A program made the position numbers and the translations under genes. Positions 26,747 through 52,620 of a stretch of DNA of 64,000 nucleotides are shown here, one piece after another. Source of the stretch: Oculina patagonica (Eukaryota). Below the pieces are notes generated by a model. It did not search any database. It was not told where the DNA came from and saw nothing but the letters and a program-made list of their open reading frames with translations. The stretch is taken from the NCBI RefSeq assembly GCF_052425735.1, contig NC_135763.1, forward strand, positions 310,001-374,000, in the 5' to 3' direction. Each line of letters opens with the position of its first letter. Within the stretch, counting starts at the first letter, position 1.

Positions 26747-26897
26747 CATGGAGCTTTTCTATTTACACTCTGCGCACGATATCGGTGTCTTACTTTAAAA
26801 AAAAATTGTATTATTTAAAGACTGCATGCTGCTGGGTTGTACGTTTTATGTTTTGTTGATGTATTTACAGCTTCGTAAAGGAAAAAGTGGAAGAAAA

Positions 26898-27007
26898 AAA
26901 AACTGGGGGTGGCTAGCCCTTTGGATTTCACCAAGCCGTTCCAAGTCAGGAGGCCCGCTAGGTATCTCCCATTCGCTACGGCTTTAGTATGCGGGATCAG
27001 AGATCCC
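26898..27007 (-). ncRNA. Divergent U6-like Pol III small nuclear RNA, copy 1
   Basis: 105 nt + T9 terminator; 104/105 identical to 48298-48402. Has a 5' hairpin GGGAUC/GAUCCC, AUACUAAA, GAGA-N5-AGC, an ISL-like hairpin and AAAUCC; TATA at about -24 to -32. Confidence 0.75.
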
Positions 27008-27030
27008 AGTAATTTGCTTTTCTTACGCGA

Positions 27031-27283
27031 TATATAAATCATTTCGTCTACGAAGCATCATCCATGTGGGGTGCGGTAAATAGTTACTCATTAACTTAAC
27101 TCTGTCTGAAGGCGTGTAAAAGTTGTTGATATTGCTTATCATTTTATTATAATTTGTTTTTTAATATCCTTGTAATGACAGCTAGCTGCAATAAAAATAA
27201 GAAAACAAAACAGTTTTCTTCCTGATACGCATGCGCAGTGTATCAAGAAGGTCGAATCAGCTAATTAAATATGCAAGAGAGTT
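27031..27283 (-). promoter_or_regulatory. Type 3 Pol III (U6-type) promoter: TATA, PSE-like and DSE-like blocks
   Basis: TTTATATA at about -30. Block catccat.tgg...aatagttact.at.aactt.actc from about -51. Distal TACGCATGCGCA and GCTAATTAAATATGCAAGAGAGTT (octamer-like). The PSE-like and distal blocks recur upstream of copy 2. Confidence 0.7.
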
Positions 27284-43124: not shown

Positions 43125-46100
43125 TCACATGGTCATTGGCTCTAACACAGTAATGACGTCACTCATTGTTGAGCGCTTGGTCGGATCCTTTGCAATGCAC
43201 TGTTCAGCTAAATCTCTTAGATTTTTGTTCCACATCAATGCAATTTGTTTCTCTCTTTCATCAGGATTCGGTGTTTGGTTGGTGCACAGTTCACAAAGAA
43301 GCACACCAAAACTGTAGACGTCGATCTGTTTGGGAGAAAAAAAAGACAAAGAGAAGAATAAGTAAAATGTTTGCCATTATTGAGTCACACACTGAAGGGC
43401 GTTTCTTAATATCGACATTCAGGCGAGTACTTCTTTAGTGTGAAAATGTTACACTCATCATTTCCGTGTATGGCCGTGTTGCCATTGGCCGATACTCAAT
43501 TATAGTCCTTGAATTGATTGAGAGAGGCACTGTGTGAGTTAGCACAAACAGTGACCTCAGCTTGTGCTCTAATCTCGATCTGTAGGTCTTAATTAAATCC
43601 AACGCACAAAATCGAAGGATTTTTTTCTTCCAAGTCTCCTTGGCGCCAAGGAGACTACAGTTAAATTCCGATAACTCAAACCACCCGGTAACTCGAGCCT
43701 ACCTTTAACTTCCCCTTTAGGTCACTTTCGTACTAATTTTACCCTCGATAACTTGAACTTCCGATAATTCGAACCTTTCTCAATTTCCCTTGAAAGTTCA
43801 AGTTATCAGGATTCAACTGTACTTTAGGGTGTTTTCTGATAACAACGATAAACCTATGACGTCATAAGATCCAAAATGGCGACGCGCGCCAAATGTTAAG
43901 CTCAACTTGGTTAATATTTGAATCCAACTTTCAACGAAACTCGGGAGCCCATTACCCTGTCGCGACAATTTATTCCAACTTATGTAGATTTCCGGCTATA
44001 ATAAAACAGTGGATTGTGCTTTGCATGGTAAATAATTGTTTGGCGTTTCAAAAAAAGGACTTCCTACCTTAGGGGACTGGTGCGAGCTGCTCGCCTCTGG
44101 AGCCGAGTAGAACGGATTGCCCGGATTTTCTGACATCTTGCTCCCCATGAACTCCGCTGATCCAAAATCGCAGAGTTTCCCGCGCCATTTGTCGCCTTGT
44201 CGCCAAACCATGACGTTGCCGCTGTTGACGTCACGATGCAGTATGGGATTGGGTCGAAAGCAGTGAAGGTAGTTGAGTCCGTAAGCCACATCAAGCGCTA
44301 GTACTCTGATGTATCTATTGCCTAAAGTTTTTTCATCCCTCACCAGCTGCGAGAGAGACATGTCCATGAGCTCTGCAACCAACAAAGGCTTACTAGAACG
44401 GTATTCCGCCACAGCCAAGAATTGTAAAATGCACGGATGTCTCACTAACGTAGCAAATGTGATTTCGCGATCGAACAGGAGTCTGTTGTGTGCAGACTGA
44501 ATGATTTCGTGGATTTCTTTCACTGCCACTTTTGTGCCTCGAAAATTCCCTTCCACAACTCTTCCCCACGCGCCAGTACCTAGAACCTTGTCAGAAAGTT
44601 TAATTTCATCTTTCGTGACCATCCACGGCTGTTCCCCGCGAAAAATGTCGGTAGTTTGACGAGCTCTTTCGATTTCGTGTTCTAAGACGCGAGCCCGTCT
44701 TTGATGTGTTTCTACATCCGCTTCAGCGCGTTGCAAACGTTCTTCACACGCACGCTTCTCGTCACGTAACGTATCGTACGCGCTTCGTTGTGCCCTACGC
44801 TCATCCTGCCATTGTTTCTCTAGTCGATCCAAGCGGTCAGAAGTCCCTTTCCTTGATTTCTCTAGAGTCTCCAAAGTTCTGTCTTTCTCAAAAAGGAGGT
44901 TGTCTTTTCGTCTTAGTTGCTCTCGGAGCTCACCACGTTCATCATTTGCCTGTCTCAAAGCCTGTTCCTTTTCTGTTAATCTAATCTCTATGTTTCCAAG
45001 GTACGCCAGGCCTCTCTCTTTCTCTCTGTTTAACCTGTCAACTGAAAACTTTCGTTCCAGGCTAATCTTGTCATTTTCTCTTTTCTCCTGCTGCAAAGTT
45101 TCTTTCTCGCGCTTGAGTGAGTTAATTTCATGATCTCTGGCCTTGAGGGTGTTTATTTTTTCTTGTATTTGTAGCTTGAATCGCTCGTTTTCCCTTCTAA
45201 TGGATTCGAGTTCGACTCTGGTATCTAAATCAGAGCTAAGTGCACTTGCGGAATGATGAGTCTTGTTCAGCTTTTTATTGTTCATGTTCTCCATCGCACT
45301 CTGCATTTCTTTCACGATCTCTTCTTGCTCGGCTAGCTGTTTTCTCAACAGTTCAGCATTTTCGTTTGCTTCTCTAAACAAACGTTCCTTTTCTCTCAGC
45401 TCGGACTCTTTCTCCTCGATCCGTTGCGTGAAAACCTGCATTTTCTCATGAAAAGACTGAATGACAAACTCTTTTCCTTCAATGACCTGCTCTTTTTCCT
45501 CAATTCGTTCCAAATGACGTTCTCGTTCATTTGTTAAACGATCGAGAATTTCCTTGCCCTTAGATAGAATTTCATTTTTTCCGTGTAGTTCAATTAACAA
45601 ATGCTTCATTTTTATTTTCATGGCCTTCTTCTTACGAGGAATTTGCTTTTCCAAGAATTCTTCGGAAAGTTCTTCATCTCCTTTGTTGGGACTCTCCGCT
45701 TTTAATTTTTCCCGCTTCTTCTCTTTCTTTGGTTTGGCTTTTGCCATCGGCTTGTCACGTGACTCTTCAACATCCGGAATTCCTGAAGGTGCAGTGTTTT
45801 CTTCATTCTCGTTGTCCACAATTTGGAAAGTTCTTTCAACGTCTAAAGAATCTTGTGAATTAAATTCTGGTACTTCTCCTATTCTTTCGAGCTCTTTTAT
45901 ACTCTGAAAAATATGAAATAATATGGATGGATTTAAAATCGAGAAATGGTTGACATGTTTAAGATTGGGGTAGTGTTTTAACGAACGCACACGTATTCCG
46001 TGACAGCCGACAGCCGGAAATGCGTCTGTGTGTTTTATGTAAACCGTTTGTTTACTTGCTAATTAATTTAATTTTCACAATAAAATGGAAAAAACTTTTC

Positions 46101-46932: not shown

Positions 46933-48292
46933 GGTTGACTTCTGATTGCAGCGGAAAAATCACAACTTTCAAATTCTTTAACAAAACCGATTCAAGTCGG
47001 CGAAGGCTTATGACCAGGAGTCCAATTCAGTTGAAACACGCATAAACTTCTGTTGATTCTCTTCCACTAAAACAGCAGATCTAGACAAAGTTAAATCGTC
47101 TTCTCGTCGGGATAGGAGAACGTACGCCAGACTGAACAAACCAAAGGCATGAACTCTGTTCTTAGCGGAAATTCGTTCTGCGTTCGCAGGCTACTTATTA
47201 TTCAACCGCTTTCTTTCCCTGGCTGAGTTACCAATAACAAAACAACCTGCTCACGTGTAAATTATGCATTGTGAAGCTCAATTCATGCTCAAAATACACG
47301 CTACGTAATCAGGATAAAGACAATAAATGATAATTAACTGCTAAAGACAACAGAACAGCACTCAAGCGGCAAGTCACAAGACTCCTGATTTCACTGCCAC
47401 TTCCTTTGATGTCACTAAGTTTACTTTTACCGCCTACTTTCGAAGTACTCTTTTAGAGAACTACCTTCCGTTGCAAAACAGAACAGAGCACAAAAAAGAA
47501 CATTTCCCGTCTTAGTTAAGGCCTATAACAGGTCGAGTACGTTAAGAGTTGAGAAACCAGTTCCAAGCTGATAGTTGCACGTTTTGCAGGAGTTTCTTAA
47601 GCATTTTTTGAGGCGCTTATACAACTGATGAAAATAACTCCACTGACAAAAGTTCTCCTGAATTAACAAAAGTTCTTGGCCGATGCAAGTTTGTCGACCG
47701 ATATAATATAAAAACGACTGAGCACACAGAGTTTCTCAGGCATTTTTATAAGCCAATTAAAACTGTCATTTACATTTCTTGACTTATTTCAAACGACTTG
47801 GTTAACTTAAGTAGACTAAGTAAACAGAGCAGGAGTATCTCAGGTATTTTAATAACACAATGAAATTTTCTTCCCTGAACTTAGACAGCGACAGAAAGAA
47901 GGCGGGGCGCGCGCGCGTGCGGGGAGGTGGGGGGGGGGGGGAGGGAAGGCTTTAAATAAAAAGCAGTAGATCCCTCTATTTTTCTCGCCTCTCAAACTCC
48001 ACTAGCTTCCACCCCCGCGCACTTCCGCCTCTGCGCTCGCGTCCAGTCCTCCCGCGATTCTTTTGGCGGACCAGTTGATGATCGAAAAAAACGGAAACAA
48101 AGAGAGCTGCGGGCGGTCTACAACTAACATAAAAATTCTCAATCGATGAAAGATTCCCGACAATCCAAAACAGTATTTTGCTATCGTGCTGCTTAATACA
48201 GCAAAAATTGTATGTGAAGACTGCTGCTGTAAAAATTATTTATTTACTACAAATTATTTATTTACAACAGTCTCGAAAAGAAGAAAAATAAA

Positions 48293-48402
48293 AAAAACTG
48301 GGGGTGGCTAGCCCTTCGGATTTCACCAAGCCGTTCCAAGTCAGGAGGCCCGCTAGGTATCTCCCATTCGCTACGGCTTTAGTATGCGGGATCAGAGATC
48401 CC
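48293..48402 (-). ncRNA. Divergent U6-like Pol III small nuclear RNA, copy 2
   Basis: GGGAUCUCUGAUCCCGCAUACUAAAGCCGUAGCGAAUGGGAGAUACCUAGCGGGCCUCCUGACUUGGAACGGCUUGGUGAAAUCCGAAGGGCUAGCCACCCCCAG + T8; one substitution relative to copy 1. Confidence 0.75.
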
Positions 48403-48424
48403 ATTCCTGTCTCTTCCAGAGGGG

Positions 48425-48667
48425 CTTTTTAACCATTCAGTTCAAGCAGCGCCATCCATATGGTAGTTGTTTAATAGTTACTTATAAACTTGACTCATTA
48501 AAGAGCCATATTAAAGTTGTTATTTTTGCCAACCTTCATTATTGGACCTTTTACAACAACAATATGCCGAATTTCAGCAAAACAGAACGATGACTAGTTC
48601 TTACCAATACGCATGCGCATTATTCGTCTGGACGCTCAAGTGGGCTAATTAAATATGCAAGAGAGTT
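48425..48667 (-). promoter_or_regulatory. Type 3 Pol III promoter of copy 2
   Basis: TTAAAAAG at about -30, PSE-like block from about -51, TACGCATGCGCA at 48608-48619 and GCTAATTAAATATGCAAGAGAGTT at 48644-48667. Confidence 0.7.
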
Positions 48668-49615: not shown

Positions 49616-52138
49616 CTACAAGGTGGCTGTTCTTCCATTTATCGTCACAAGTCCCTGAGCTCGCAGAGACTCAGCTTGTTGAGTCAACACTAAAATGACG
49701 TCACTGATAGCTGGACGCGCCTCAGGGTCCCTCATGACACAACGCATAATGAGCTCTCGGAGGACACCGTTAGTTACCAGGCCTATCTGTTCTTGGATCT
49801 GCTGCGGGACCGGAAGTTCTCTGATACACATCTCGCACAACAATAAACCGAAACTGTAAACATCAGCCTGGAAAATAATACATGAGAAACAAACAGTTTT
49901 TGGATGAAAGATGGACGAATAAAAGGAATTTTCCTCAAAAGGACAATTGTTGTATGATCTACTAATCAAATTGATATAAGTAGGAAAAAGGAGGAATCTG
50001 AAAAATGACTCAGTAGAGGAGACTGAAGTCCATTTCAGTTAAAATTGGGAAATTCACGTAGGGCAGCGAAGAAAAAAAACCGCACTACTAAAACAGCGTA
50101 AATTTTGTCCAAGCGCATATTATGCGCTTGAACGAGTGTTGTTGTTTTTTTATATGGAATAGAGTCATGTAAAAAGGCCGCAATTTGCCACAAATAATTC
50201 TGGTTTTCAATCCCGAAGCTCTACCTCTCTTCCGTTTTCCGTTATTTTATACTAACATTAACTACATTCTCACAACTTACTTGCATTAATTTGTTATAAA
50301 AAAGAATCTCTTAGTTATTCATGCTTGCGATTAAAGCGTTACAGAGGAGACGTTTCTTTAGCCCATCACGCAGTCTTTTCCCTAACGAAAAAGGTAAGAT
50401 TGGGTGGCTGGCCAACAATTTTCAGATATTTTATAATCACCTTTGGCGACTGTTGAGAAGTGAGAGCCTCAGGCGCGGCATAAATCCTCGCTCCTGGATT
50501 GACCGTCATGTACTGGCGCATGAAATTTGCCGCTCCATAATCTGACAGCTTGGCCCTCCAACTGTCATCCCGTCTCCATAGCAACACGTTGGAACTACTG
50601 ATGTCTCTATGCATGATGGGAAAAGGCTTATTTAGATGGAGATAATTAAGTCCTCGAGCGACATCCAAAGCGAGGCAAATGATCTCTTCCTGATGTAATG
50701 CACGCTGAGTTAAAACGTTCCTCAAATCTGTATCAAGCAGCTCGGTTACAAACAATGGGCTTCCATCATCATTAGTCGCACCAATAAACTGTAACAGATG
50801 AGGGTGCCGACACCGTGACGCAATGCTCATTTCCCGCTCAAAAAGTCTGCGATTGTGAGGCGAGAGAATAAGCTCGTGAATTTGCTTTACTGCAACTTGA
50901 CAGCCGCGAAACATTCCTTCGTACACCTTGCCCCAGGCCCCTACACCTAAACTGTTTTCACTCAGAGTCACTTCCTCGCGTCGAATGATCCAATCACGTG
51001 GTTCGAGGCGCTGATACTCGGCCAAGGTCTCTTGCGCAGCAGACACCGCTGATTGTAACTCTCGCAGGCGTCGGTCGCTTTCGGACGCAGTTCTTTCGCT
51101 GTCGCGGATGCGTTGTTCATAGTGCTCGCGCTCTCGTTCCAGGTTTTCTCGATCTTGCTGTAAGGTTCCTCTTTCCTCAGTGAGTTCTCTCTCTCTAGAC
51201 ATGCGTCTGCTCCTTTCTTGCTCCAGTTCAGTCTGTACGCTCCTCAGTCTGTCCTGTAAGTTCGTCTTCTGTTCACGTTCTAGCTGCAAGAGCCGTAACT
51301 GTTCCGCAATAGTGTCCTCTTTCGCTTGAACATCTTCTCGGCTGGACTGACTTGACAACCGTTCATTTTCTAGTCTTCTCTCTAACTCAGTACAAGCACT
51401 TCTAGCTTGGCGTAGCTCCTCTTCAACTCTCAATCTCGCTTGTTGCTCTTCGCCCAAAGTTCCTTGTAATCCATGGAAGTTTGTCTCTTTTTCTCTTAGC
51501 TGTTGTTCTCTCATGTTACGTACTGTTTTCTCTTCATCAAGCGCCCGCCGAACCCGCACAAGATCACTCTGAACTTTACGCAAATGAGCATTTGCTTCAC
51601 GTTCTTGTTCAAGCTCGTTTTGAATCTGCCGTACAGAAACTCGTTCTTGTTCCAGCTCATTAGATAACAAGGCTAAATTAACAGTTTGTTGAGTTAAGGT
51701 GTGATCTTTTTCTGTCAAAGCGTTTTCTAAAACTCGGATTCTTTCATACAGACGTTCCTGATCGGCCGAATAACCAATCTCTAAATCTCTTATCCGCCCA
51801 AGTTGGCGATCTTTCTCCTCTTCCATTTCTTGTAGCTTTCCTCTTTCTATTTCCAGAAGTTTTTGGTGTTGCTGTAAGTTTTCTCTTTGTTCCTTGCTGT
51901 GCTGATCGAGTAGCGTGATATGTGACTCCATTTCTTTATGGTGAAGTAGAATATCTGGTTTAACAGGTTCAGAGCCGGTTGCTACAGCGTTGTCACTGTT
52001 TGTGACATCCGAGGCTTTCCGTCGCCTGCTTCTTGTTTGTATCGCGGTGTCTGCTGGGTCATTTTTTTGCTCCTTCGTTCGTTCCTCCAAACATTCGGAT
52101 TCAGTGTTGTTGGTAGCACTGGAAGGAGAGGCTGGCAT
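49616..52138 (-). CDS. Coiled-coil + C-terminal TKL-type Ser/Thr protein kinase (paralog B)
   Basis: Exons 52138-50441 and 49867-49616; a possible upstream in-frame exon lies at 52515-52466. Motifs LGVGAWG, VAVK, HRDISSSN, DYG, YAAPE, DVYSFG. The intron after 'SPK' is at the same position as in paralog A. Confidence 0.88.
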
Positions 52139-52620
52139 TTTGGCCTGAAAGTTCAAAAGAAACACACTGCAAAGTCTCAATACGTTCAAAATCTAAGTTT
52201 TGAGAACTTTTTAAAAGATCAAGGCAGTGTCCCAACTTGTCAGCTTGAAAATGTATTGACCTTCCCTCAGTTTACGGAATCCGAAACTCAAGAGCCTGCT
52301 CGCAGGCTATTGCAACTACGAAGTTCGAGGGCTTACTTGCTAGATTTGAGGAAAATGTATGGTGAACTGCATGTAAGGCTAAATTTTGAAGTAGAATTAC
52401 GCCAAGCACTGTTTTCAATTGCAGCGTGGCTTATGCAGTAAAGATAACCACATCAAATCACTTACCGGAGCAGACTTTGATCTATCTGTGAAGAGCTTTT
52501 TACGAGCGTGTTTGCCTGTATAGACAAAACAGACAATACTTAACTGTGCTCAGGTATTAGCAAAGTTATTCGTTTTTTAAAGAAACTATTGCGCTTTGGC
52601 AGGCACAGGCAAATTTGGAC

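What the first reader, a model, noticed from the sequence alone, without database searches (positions are those of the whole stretch)
48293..48667. Second copy shows a selection footprint on the RNA and its Pol III promoter boxes
Seen: the two copies lie 21.4 kb apart in unrelated gene contexts. The 105-nt body differs at one base (UCC-GAA-GGG vs UCC-AAA-GGG, a predicted loop). Identity stops one base past the predicted +1 G and at the T-run. Upstream, short blocks stand out at matched spacing: an AT-rich box at -30, catccat.tgg...aatagttact.at.aactt at -51, and TACGCATGCGCA plus a perfectly conserved 24-mer GCTAATTAAATATGCAAGAGAGTT at about -205 to -275. Established: TATA + PSE + octamer-containing DSE is the U6/7SK promoter layout. 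Inference: an old duplication with both genes under purifying selection or gene conversion. The comparison also yields a lineage-specific PSE/DSE, potentially useful for sgRNA expression in this animal.
Basis: partly seen in the sequence, partly recalled or inferred. Interest (0 to 1): 0.8.

Follow-up and report, generated by a model that had tools for sequence, protein, structure and literature searches.

The report
Conserved coral small-RNA gene, second copy
A stony coral carries two copies of a 105-base RNA gene with the same promoter layout as its own U6 genes; the RNA is almost unchanged in other corals, fits no known RNA family, and its expression and job are unshown.

Summary
Copy B (48402..48298, minus strand) and copy A (27007..26903) differ at one base (RNA position 86). 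They are the only two copies in the 529-Mb genome.

Homology covers about 470 bp, from the far edge of the 24-mer to about 100 bp past the T-run. Outside the RNA it survives only as islands.

These islands match the promoter layout of this genome's own U6 and U6atac genes:
- a PSE at -61/-62, at U6 spacing;
- a TATA box 31-32 bp downstream of the PSE;
- a CGCATGCG palindrome further upstream.

The 24-mer and the extended PSE block occur only at these two loci.

Ten coral metagenome contigs (about five taxa) carry the gene in synteny with copy A. In them the RNA is 95-97% identical, and conservation starts exactly at the first G and ends at the T-run. The same promoter blocks are conserved. Copy A is therefore the ancestral locus, and copy B is a later dispersed duplicate that keeps the constrained positions (70% vs 47%, p = 4e-4).

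The RNA has no Rfam match. Its likeness to U6 is only suggestive (shuffle p about 0.05; nhmmer E about 1). Transcription is not shown.

The scan already noted this RNA at copy A (s1-291598).

The parts
48298..48402 (-). Copy B, RNA body (105 nt, predicted +1 G at 48402)
   Evidence: 104/105 identical to copy A and 95-97% identical to orthologues in other corals. Conservation starts at the first G.
48290..48297 (-). Copy B, T8 run (Pol III terminator)
   Evidence: follows the last conserved base directly. All orthologues have T7-T9 here.
48425..48434 (-). Copy B, weak TATA-like box (GGTTAAAAAG) at -33..-24
   Evidence: TTAAAAAG starts at -30, 31 nt downstream of the PSE anchor. Weaker than TTATATAT in copy A and TAATATAG in the orthologues.
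48450..48466 (-). Copy B, PSE (CTACCATATGGATGGCG), anchor at -61
   Evidence: 13.6 bits with a PWM built from this genome's U6/U6atac/U4/U2 PSEs. Background frequency 3e-5 per position.
48473..48496 (-). Copy B, gene-specific block just upstream of the PSE
   Evidence: conserved in copy A and all orthologues; the block-plus-PSE composite occurs only at the two loci in the genome.
48608..48619 (-). Copy B, TGCGCATGCGTA palindrome (distal element), about -206..-217
   Evidence: invariant in copy A and in nearly all orthologue loci (core CGCATGCG in every locus aligned; the simple motif scan found none in the L048 contig). The same core lies upstream of U6, U6atac1 and some U4 genes.
48644..48667 (-). 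Copy B, 24-mer distal element with GCAT-N3-TAAT; far edge of A/B homology
   Evidence: identical in copy A and unique to the two loci. Orthologues carry a near-identical version. A/B homology ends at 48667/27283.
48203..48667 (-). Copy B, whole duplicated unit (homologous to 26801-27283)
   Evidence: one blastn alignment, 69% over 488 columns; nothing beyond it.
26903..27007 (-). Copy A, RNA body (ancestral, syntenic locus)
   Evidence: all ten metagenome contigs also align to copy A's neighbours (window 21.5-32.1 kb), never to copy B's.
26894..26902 (-). Copy A, T9 terminator
27030..27039 (-). Copy A, TATA box (ATTTATATAT)
   Evidence: TTATATAT starts at -30, 32 nt downstream of the PSE anchor, as in U6.
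27057..27073 (-). Copy A, PSE (CACCCCACATGGATGAT), anchor at -62
   Evidence: 18.8 bits, the top PSE score in the 64-kb window. The core CCCACATGG is identical to that of U6_1, U6_2 and U4_5/6.
27078..27102 (-). Copy A, gene-specific block upstream of the PSE
27226..27237 (-). Copy A, TGCGCATGCGTA palindrome
27260..27283 (-). Copy A, 24-mer distal element

Best explanation
Copy B is a dispersed duplicate, about 470 bp long, of a complete transcription unit. The original is copy A, which sits in a locus syntenic across stony corals.

Both copies are most likely gene-external (type-3) RNA polymerase III genes. Their parts, from upstream to downstream, are:
- a distal enhancer region made of a gene-specific 24-mer (GCAT-N3-TAAT) and a CGCATGCG palindrome about 25 bp downstream of it;
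- an extended PSE at -62;
- a TATA box 32 bp downstream of the PSE;
- initiation at the first G of GGGAUC;
- termination in the T-run.

The product would be a small RNA of about 105 nt plus a U-tail, with a 6-bp 5' hairpin followed by RCAUAC.

Purifying selection acts on nearly every base of the RNA and on the promoter blocks.

What is shown: the anatomy, the copy number, the match to this genome's own snRNA promoters, the cross-species conservation and the synteny.

What is inferred: Pol III transcription, the start site, and a nuclear snRNA-like role. I consider a distant U6 relative with U6-type 5' capping the single likeliest identity, at roughly one chance in three.
For: Copy number and unit limits:
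- Two copies only in the genome.
- A/B homology runs 26801-27283 against 48203-48667 and stops at the 24-mer.

Promoter matches the genome's own snRNA genes:
- A PSE PWM trained without this gene scores 18.8 and 13.6 bits at -62/-61. U6 and U6atac PSEs are at -63/-64, U4 and U2 at -56/-57.
- The PSE-to-TATA distance is 32 nt in U6, in copy A and in every orthologue with a detected TATA, and 31 nt in copy B. TATA to +1 is 29-31 nt. T-runs are 7-9 long.
- U4 genes have the PSE but no TATA.
- CGCATGCG lies upstream of U6, U6atac1 and some U4 genes. All 3 occurrences in the window are in PSE+TATA modules, against 0.27 expected.

Cross-species conservation:
- Ten metagenome contigs carry orthologues.
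- RNA differences are confined to the 5' hairpin loop, positions 16, 65 and 92, and the length of the final C-run. The flanks differ from -1 onward.
- The promoter blocks are conserved across about five taxa.
- The neighbouring single-exon tropomyosin region is only about 74% identical, and the upstream 300 nt 60-69%.

Copy B keeps the constrained positions:
- It matches copy A at 70% of the columns invariant in A plus orthologues, against 47% of the variable columns (Fisher p = 4e-4).

Contrast with an unconstrained copy:
- A decayed partial copy in L048 shows what an unconstrained copy looks like.
Against: - No transcript is shown. Contigs from RNA-labelled runs hold the body but run on into promoter-side flank, so they could be DNA or read-through.
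- There is no covariation support for any fold: 0 compensatory pairs, and the few changes break predicted pairs.
- The MFE is not better than shuffles (z = -0.9).
- Copy B has a degenerate TATA box and a weaker PSE, so it may be poorly active.
- The same CGCATGCG+PSE+TATA module is spread by a dispersed repeat with about 900 copies. The module by itself therefore does not prove a cellular gene.
Confidence: 0.8

Rival explanations
1. Only copy A is a working gene. Copy B is a decaying or weakly active duplicate, and its body stays intact through occasional gene conversion from A rather than through selection on B itself.
For: - Copy B has a degenerate TATA (TTAAAAAG) and a lower PSE score, 13.6 against 18.8 bits.
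- Copy B's upstream region is the most divergent of all loci, 49-57% identity.
- No B-type locus was found in the other taxa.
- A and B share derived states against the other taxa: C at RNA position 92, the UCU loop, and the 24-mer variant.
Against: - Copy B keeps the PSE, the palindrome and the 24-mer as separate islands. A conversion tract would be contiguous.
- It retains constrained columns preferentially.
- It carries the ancestral G at position 86, while copy A has the derived A.
- DNA runs under another organism label and a coral metagenome hold more of the B region (0.42-0.62 of sampled words) than the body alone would give (0.24 or less). The locus is therefore not private to one individual.
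Confidence: 0.25
2. The RNA is a third U6-class spliceosomal snRNA, an old U6 paralogue, with UGGGAGA in place of ACAGAGA.
For: - It has the same promoter class and geometry as U6 and a similar length.
- A 5' hairpin is followed by RCAUACUAAA.
- An ungapped 44-nt register with U6 gives 27 identities. It places GAGA, a 5-nt spacer and AGC at the same positions (50 of 1000 shuffles reach the score).
- U6 genes are the only nhmmer hits among 20 local snRNA genes, in the same register.
- Note s1-291598 reads the RNA the same way.
Against: - No Rfam U6 or U6atac hit even at E up to 10.
- nhmmer E is about 1 and gapped local alignment is not significant.
- The genome already has canonical U6 and U6atac.
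- By hand, the region in register with U6 stem II does not pair with this coral's U4 (inference).
- No partner snRNAs were identified.
Confidence: 0.3
3. The RNA is the cnidarian counterpart of 7SK: a miniature scaffold that binds HEXIM and LARP7.
For: - The genome encodes HEXIM (142.6 bits), yet the Rfam 7SK model finds nothing at E up to 1.
- A recent survey places HEXIM at the base of animals and names no cnidarian 7SK RNA (10.1101/2023.02.19.529146). An older survey calls 7SK hard to find in basal metazoans (PMC2655684).
- It has a type-3 promoter.
- The 5' hairpin pairs two GAUC motifs, which I recall as the core of the HEXIM site in 7SK.
- It has a 3' U-tail.
Against: - At 105 nt it is about a third of the length of any 7SK I know of.
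- The hairpin has no U bulges.
- No 7SK model matches.
- GAUC is self-complementary, so the motif pair is cheap to obtain by chance.
- A true 7SK could be any other undetected type-3 gene. Several unexamined candidates appear.
Confidence: 0.1
4. It is a Pol II snRNA gene, or merely a piece of a mobile repeat that carries an snRNA-type promoter.
For: - The PSE is shared with Pol II snRNA genes.
- A repeat family of about 900 copies carries CGCATGCG+PSE+TATA, and one member lies in this window at 58081.
Against: - The TATA box is at -30 and the PSE at the U6 position, not the U4 position. A T7-T9 run sits exactly at the end of conservation, and I saw no conserved 3' box.
- There are only two copies, and the 24-mer and PSE composite are unique to them.
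- Synteny is conserved across taxa.
Confidence: 0.05

Closest known systems
U6 snRNA genes (type-3, gene-external Pol III promoter: DSE, PSE, TATA, T-run)
   Same: - PSE at about -62 with a core identical to this coral's U6 (CCCACATGG).
- TATA box 32 nt downstream of the PSE, +1 G about 30 nt further on, and a T-run terminator.
- A CGCATGCG element upstream.
- The RNA is about the length of U6, starts with a hairpin followed by AUAC, and shows GAGA-N5-AGC in the U6 register.
   Different: - The RNA does not match the U6 or U6atac covariance models, and ACAGAGA is replaced by UGGGAGA.
- The distal elements lie at about -210 to -275, against about -110 to -120 in U6.
- The PSE carries a gene-specific extension of about 24 nt, and the 24-mer occurs nowhere else in the genome.
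7SK RNA gene
   Same: - Type-3 Pol III promoter.
- A 5' hairpin with paired GAUC motifs.
- A U-tail.
- HEXIM is encoded in the genome while no canonical 7SK is detectable.
   Different: - One third of the length.
- No bulged uridines.
- No model match.
- No evidence of binding to HEXIM or LARP7.
Vertebrate snRNA distal sequence element (octamer plus SPH/Staf site)
   Same: Two conserved distal blocks about 25 bp apart, more than 200 bp upstream of the start. One has a bipartite GCAT...TAAT motif, which I recall as POU-like.
   Different: The second block is a CGCATGCG palindrome. From memory it resembles an NRF1-type site and is not an SPH site. There is no canonical ATGCAAAT octamer.

Membership tests
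Type-3 (gene-external) Pol III transcription unit | TATA box near -30 | tested here: met
   the TATA starts at -30 in A and B and at -29..-31 in nine of ten orthologue loci; my TATA pattern found none in L043 (TAATATAC there). Copy B's version is weak (TTAAAAAG).
Type-3 (gene-external) Pol III transcription unit | PSE of the organism's own snRNA genes, at the Pol III-specific distance | tested here: met
   18.8 and 13.6 bits with a PWM trained on other genes. The anchor is at -62/-61, as in U6 and U6atac (-63/-64) and unlike U4 and U2 (-56/-57).
Type-3 (gene-external) Pol III transcription unit | Distal enhancer element shared with other snRNA genes | tested here: met
   CGCATGCG lies upstream of U6_1-3, the U6 variant, U6atac1 and U4_4. 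Enhancer function itself was not tested.
Type-3 (gene-external) Pol III transcription unit | Termination at a run of four or more T directly after the RNA | tested here: met
   T7-T9 in all 12 loci, starting where conservation ends.
Type-3 (gene-external) Pol III transcription unit | A discrete transcript and Pol III/SNAPc occupancy | tested here: inconclusive
   contigs of RNA-labelled runs contain the body but extend into the promoter-side flank. No raw reads were available, and occupancy cannot be tested with these tools.
U6 snRNA (RF00026) | Match to the family covariance model | tested here: not met
   no hit at gathering score or at E up to 10. True U6 genes in this genome score 112-114 bits.
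U6 snRNA (RF00026) | ACAGAGA box and AGC triad in the conserved spacing | tested here: inconclusive
   GAGA-N5-AGC is in register, but the box reads UGGGAGA. The overall similarity has a shuffle p of about 0.05.
U6atac snRNA (RF00619) | Match to the family covariance model | tested here: not met
   no hit. The genome's own U6atac genes score 111-113 bits. The ungapped comparison is not better than shuffles.
7SK RNA (RF00100) | Match to the family model; length about 300 nt; HEXIM-binding 5' hairpin; LARP7-binding 3' hairpin | tested here: not met
   no model hit. The length is 105 nt. Only the paired GAUC motifs and the U-tail are present, and protein binding cannot be tested here.
Dispersed repeat / SINE | Many copies in the genome | tested here: not met
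   exactly two loci for the body, the 24-mer and the PSE composite.

The most novel reading that the evidence does not exclude
The RNA is the core of an undescribed coral snRNP. It would be either a third U6-class RNA beside U6 and U6atac, with a changed 5'-splice-site box, or the missing cnidarian RNA partner of HEXIM (a miniature 7SK). Neither reading is excluded: almost every base is constrained, and the promoter is the one this genome uses for U6.
Probability: 0.2. Interest if true: 0.9.

Novelty: new variant of a known kind. Interest (0 to 1): 0.62.

Why it matters
- It adds a deeply conserved, unclassified small RNA to stony corals. Small-RNA classes such as 7SK, Y and vault RNA were reported as largely unknown in basal metazoans (PMC2655684).
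- It gives the first explicit, cross-checked description I could find of a coral snRNA-type promoter: the PSE consensus, the 32-nt PSE-to-TATA rule that separates Pol III from Pol II snRNA genes, and the CGCATGCG distal element.
- That description is directly usable for choosing promoters to express guide RNAs in corals. The genome's bona fide U6 promoters (L005-L007) are the more obvious first choice.
- The single A/G difference at RNA position 86 is a built-in marker for telling which copy is expressed.

Tried and rejected
- Rfam at gathering score and at E up to 10 gave only junk hits.
- Gapped local alignment of the RNA to U6, U6atac, U4, U2 and MRP was no better than shuffles.
- RNAduplex partner search against U4 and U2 does not discriminate: even true U6 with U4 is no better than shuffles (one search timed out).
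- Consensus folding found no compensatory pairs, so no structure can be supported.
- Read laying on four runs returned one contig each from three of the four runs and none from the fourth. They do not show a discrete transcript and list no variant positions.
- Pairwise identities computed with free end gaps were uninformative, since shuffled controls scored the same. I used identities from the multiple alignment instead.
- My first PSE anchor regex dropped half the sites. It was redone.
- Literature searches for coral U6 promoters, cnidarian PSEs and the sequence itself found nothing relevant.
- By eye I considered and rejected: Y RNA (the ends do not pair), vault RNA (no A or B boxes), SL RNA (no Sm site; Pol III signals), a telomerase RNA template (no CCCUAA), a C/D snoRNA and a small ORF.
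U4atac, U12, the divergent U4 copies and the other type-3 candidates were therefore not examined.

Full report
**What is there**

The finding covers the second copy (B) of a small gene on the minus strand.
- Copy B's RNA body is 48402..48298 and copy A's is 27007..26903.
- The bodies are 105 nt long and differ at one base, RNA position 86: G at 48317 and A at 26922.
- BLAST of the body against the whole 529-Mb assembly finds only these two loci.
- A sensitive A-against-B comparison gives a single homologous segment, 26801-27283 against 48203-48667, at 69% identity. It starts about 100 nt beyond the terminator and stops exactly at the far edge of the 24-mer.
- The proximal boxes (PSE, TATA) are in register to within 1 nt. 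The two distal boxes sit 11-13 nt further out in copy A.

**Is the promoter real?**

I collected this genome's own snRNA genes with Rfam models:
- three canonical U6 genes (112-114 bits) and variants;
- two U6atac genes;
- U2 arrays;
- many U4 genes;
- four MRP genes.

Their upstream regions share a PSE with core CCCACA(T/A)(G/T)G. A weight matrix built from 14 of these sites, with the gene under study left out, gave the following:
- Copy A scores 18.8 bits, the best hit on either strand of the 64-kb window.
- Copy B scores 13.6 bits.
- The orthologues score 15.5-17.6 bits.

Position matters as much as score:
- The anchor is at -63/-64 in U6 and U6atac and at -61 to -63 in this gene across all loci, once +1 is re-anchored in the two loci with a longer hairpin loop. 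It is at -56/-57 in the Pol II genes U4 and U2.
- U6, U6atac and this gene have a TATA box; the U4 genes have none.
- The PSE-to-TATA distance is 32 nt in U6, in copy A and in every orthologue with a detected TATA, and 31 nt in copy B. The TATA box lies 29-31 nt from the first conserved G.
- All 12 loci end in T7-T9.

This is the geometry of a gene-external (type-3) Pol III unit with +1 at the first G. That layout is established knowledge for U6 and 7SK. Here it is matched against the organism's own genes rather than against a vertebrate consensus.

**Distal elements**

- CGCATGCG lies at about -110 to -120 upstream of U6_1-3 and a U6 variant, at -240 upstream of U6atac1, and near some U4 genes.
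- In the window the 8-mer occurs three times against 0.27 expected. All three sit upstream of a PSE+TATA module: copy A, copy B and 58081.
- The shared distal element is therefore this palindrome. From memory it looks like an NRF1-type site.
- Allowing up to 3 mismatches, the 24-mer occurs only at the two loci.
- The composite of the PSE with its upstream extension is equally unique.
- The 24-mer contains GCAT-N3-TAAT, which I recall as a POU-class half-site arrangement. It is not a canonical octamer.

**Evidence from other corals**

An exact 24-nt core of the RNA found ten coral metagenome contigs. By mutual similarity they represent about five taxa.

The RNA itself:
- It is 104-107 nt long in these contigs.
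- It differs from the window's copies only in the loop of the 5' hairpin (UCU, UCC, CCC, or a 5-nt loop), at positions 16, 65 and 92, and in a C-run of 4 or 5.
- The stem GGGAUC/GAUCCC is invariant.
- Conservation begins exactly at the first G, the base at -1 varies, and conservation ends at the T-run.

The same promoter islands are conserved:
- the 24-mer in a slightly different version;
- GCGCATGCGTA, whose CGCATGCG core is kept in every locus aligned;
- a GCTAGCT block;
- a block near -110;
- the extended PSE;
- TAATATAG.

For scale, the upstream 300 nt is 60-69% identical between copy A and the orthologues. The neighbouring single-exon tropomyosin region is about 74% identical. The RNA is 95-97% identical.

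A partial second copy on contig L048 has decayed: 89% over 76 nt, with both ends lost. It shows what happens without constraint.

**Which copy is which**

- Every metagenome contig also aligns to the neighbours of copy A (window 21.5-32.1 kb) and never to those of copy B. Copy A is therefore the ancestral, syntenic locus.
- Copy B lies between two kinase-domain ORFs and is the derived copy.
- Copy B's upstream region is the most divergent of all, at 49-57% identity.
- Even so, copy B matches copy A at 70% of the columns invariant in A plus seven orthologues, against 47% of the variable columns (p = 4e-4). This is a selection footprint measured independently of the A/B comparison that prompted the finding.
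- A and B share derived states against the other taxa: C at position 92, the UCU loop, and the T-containing 24-mer. Either the duplication postdates the split from those taxa and copy B's spacers turned over fast, or conversion has homogenised the functional parts. The island pattern argues against conversion alone.
- Copy B's TATA box and PSE are weaker than copy A's, so lower activity is plausible.
- DNA runs under another organism label and a coral metagenome hold more of the B region than the body alone would give. The B locus is therefore not private to one individual.

**Expression**

- Many runs under about ten organism labels hold the body.
- When laid on the locus, the contigs from RNA-labelled runs cover the body at 95-100% but continue into flank on the promoter side.
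- This shows presence and conservation, not a discrete transcript.
- Transcription, the start site and the polymerase remain inferences from the anatomy.

**What the RNA is**

- It matches no Rfam family, even at E up to 10.
A 5' hairpin is followed by AUACUAAA, then GAGA 18 nt later, then AGC after 5 more nt, giving 27 of 44 identities.
- Shuffles reach that score 50 times in 1000.
- nhmmer with the orthologue profile finds only the U6 genes among 20 local snRNA genes, in the same register, but at E about 1.
- Gapped alignment is not significant.
- I therefore treat 'distant U6 relative' as the leading but unproven identity, at about 0.3.
- A 7SK-like role is a weaker alternative, at about 0.1. 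HEXIM is encoded, no 7SK is detectable, and the 5' hairpin pairs two GAUC motifs. Against this, the RNA is far too short and lacks bulges.
- No fold is supported by covariation, and the MFE is unremarkable.
- Conservation of the primary sequence at almost every base suggests dense contacts with proteins or other RNAs rather than a simple scaffold. This is inference.

**Relation to earlier scan notes and to the literature**

- The scan had already noted the RNA at copy A (s1-291598) and read it as U6-shaped. My tests agree on the resemblance but show it is statistically marginal.
- I found no paper containing the sequence or describing coral snRNA promoters.

**Verdict**

- This is a real, two-copy, deeply conserved gene with this coral's U6-type promoter, coding for an unclassified small RNA.
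- It is a new variant within a known kind of gene.
- Its interest lies in the unknown RNA and in a usable definition of the coral type-3 promoter.

Noticed in passing
window 58081-58260 (+); also L051-L080: A CGCATGCG + PSE (GTACCACAAGGAGAGC) + TATA module in U6 spacing, followed by GTGCTC... and an AT-rich palindrome. The module pattern occurs 910 times in the genome and 0 times in the reversed control, in several subfamilies. This is a dispersed repeat that carries a U6-type external Pol III promoter. Its nature (SINE-like, MITE or other) was not worked out.
   Followed up: partly
G000:C10:15567018-15567460, C13:1370129-1370571, C1187:337627-342480: Tandem arrays with a period of about 122 bp. 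Each unit contains CGCATGCG, a PSE and TATATAAAGG, which leaves almost no room for a gene. This may be a satellite derived from an snRNA promoter.
   Followed up: no
L008, L009 (G000:C5:15.64-15.66 Mb): U6 variant genes. The first 70 nt or so are identical to U6. The 3' part is different, with an A-rich tail in place of a T-run. They have their own PSE, a TATA-like box and CGCATGCGC.
   Followed up: no
L033-L036 (RNase MRP RNA genes): The MRP genes have a TATA box at about -33 and two GATTGG boxes, but no CCCACA-type PSE. Not all of this coral's candidate type-3 genes use the same proximal element.
   Followed up: no
L003/L004 (U6atac genes): The coral U6atac reads GAGCCGAGAGA where, as I recall, human U6atac has AAGGAGAGA. 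This is the box that pairs with the U12-type 5' splice site. It may point to a shifted minor-intron consensus in corals.
   Followed up: no
L048:867-942: A decayed partial second copy of the RNA (89% over 76 nt, lacking the 5' hairpin and 3' end) lies about 300 nt upstream of the intact gene in one metagenome taxon.
   Followed up: partly
G000:C7:3004056-3004478 and C13:3520197-3520547 (L049, L050): Two HEXIM-domain genes (142.6 and 69.7 bits) in a genome where the Rfam 7SK model finds nothing. The coral's 7SK partner RNA is unidentified.
   Followed up: partly
window 30857-31846 (-); 43996-45990 (-) and 50366-52189 (-): A single-exon tropomyosin ORF lies next to copy A and is syntenic in other corals. 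Two kinase-domain ORFs flank copy B.
   Followed up: partly
G000:C1:24250506-24279926, C7:11766414 and 11828230, C8:1145829, C11:18479367: Non-repeat matches to CGCATGCG-N140-170-PSE-TATA, the spacing seen in this gene and in U6atac1. They may be further type-3 Pol III genes.
   Followed up: no
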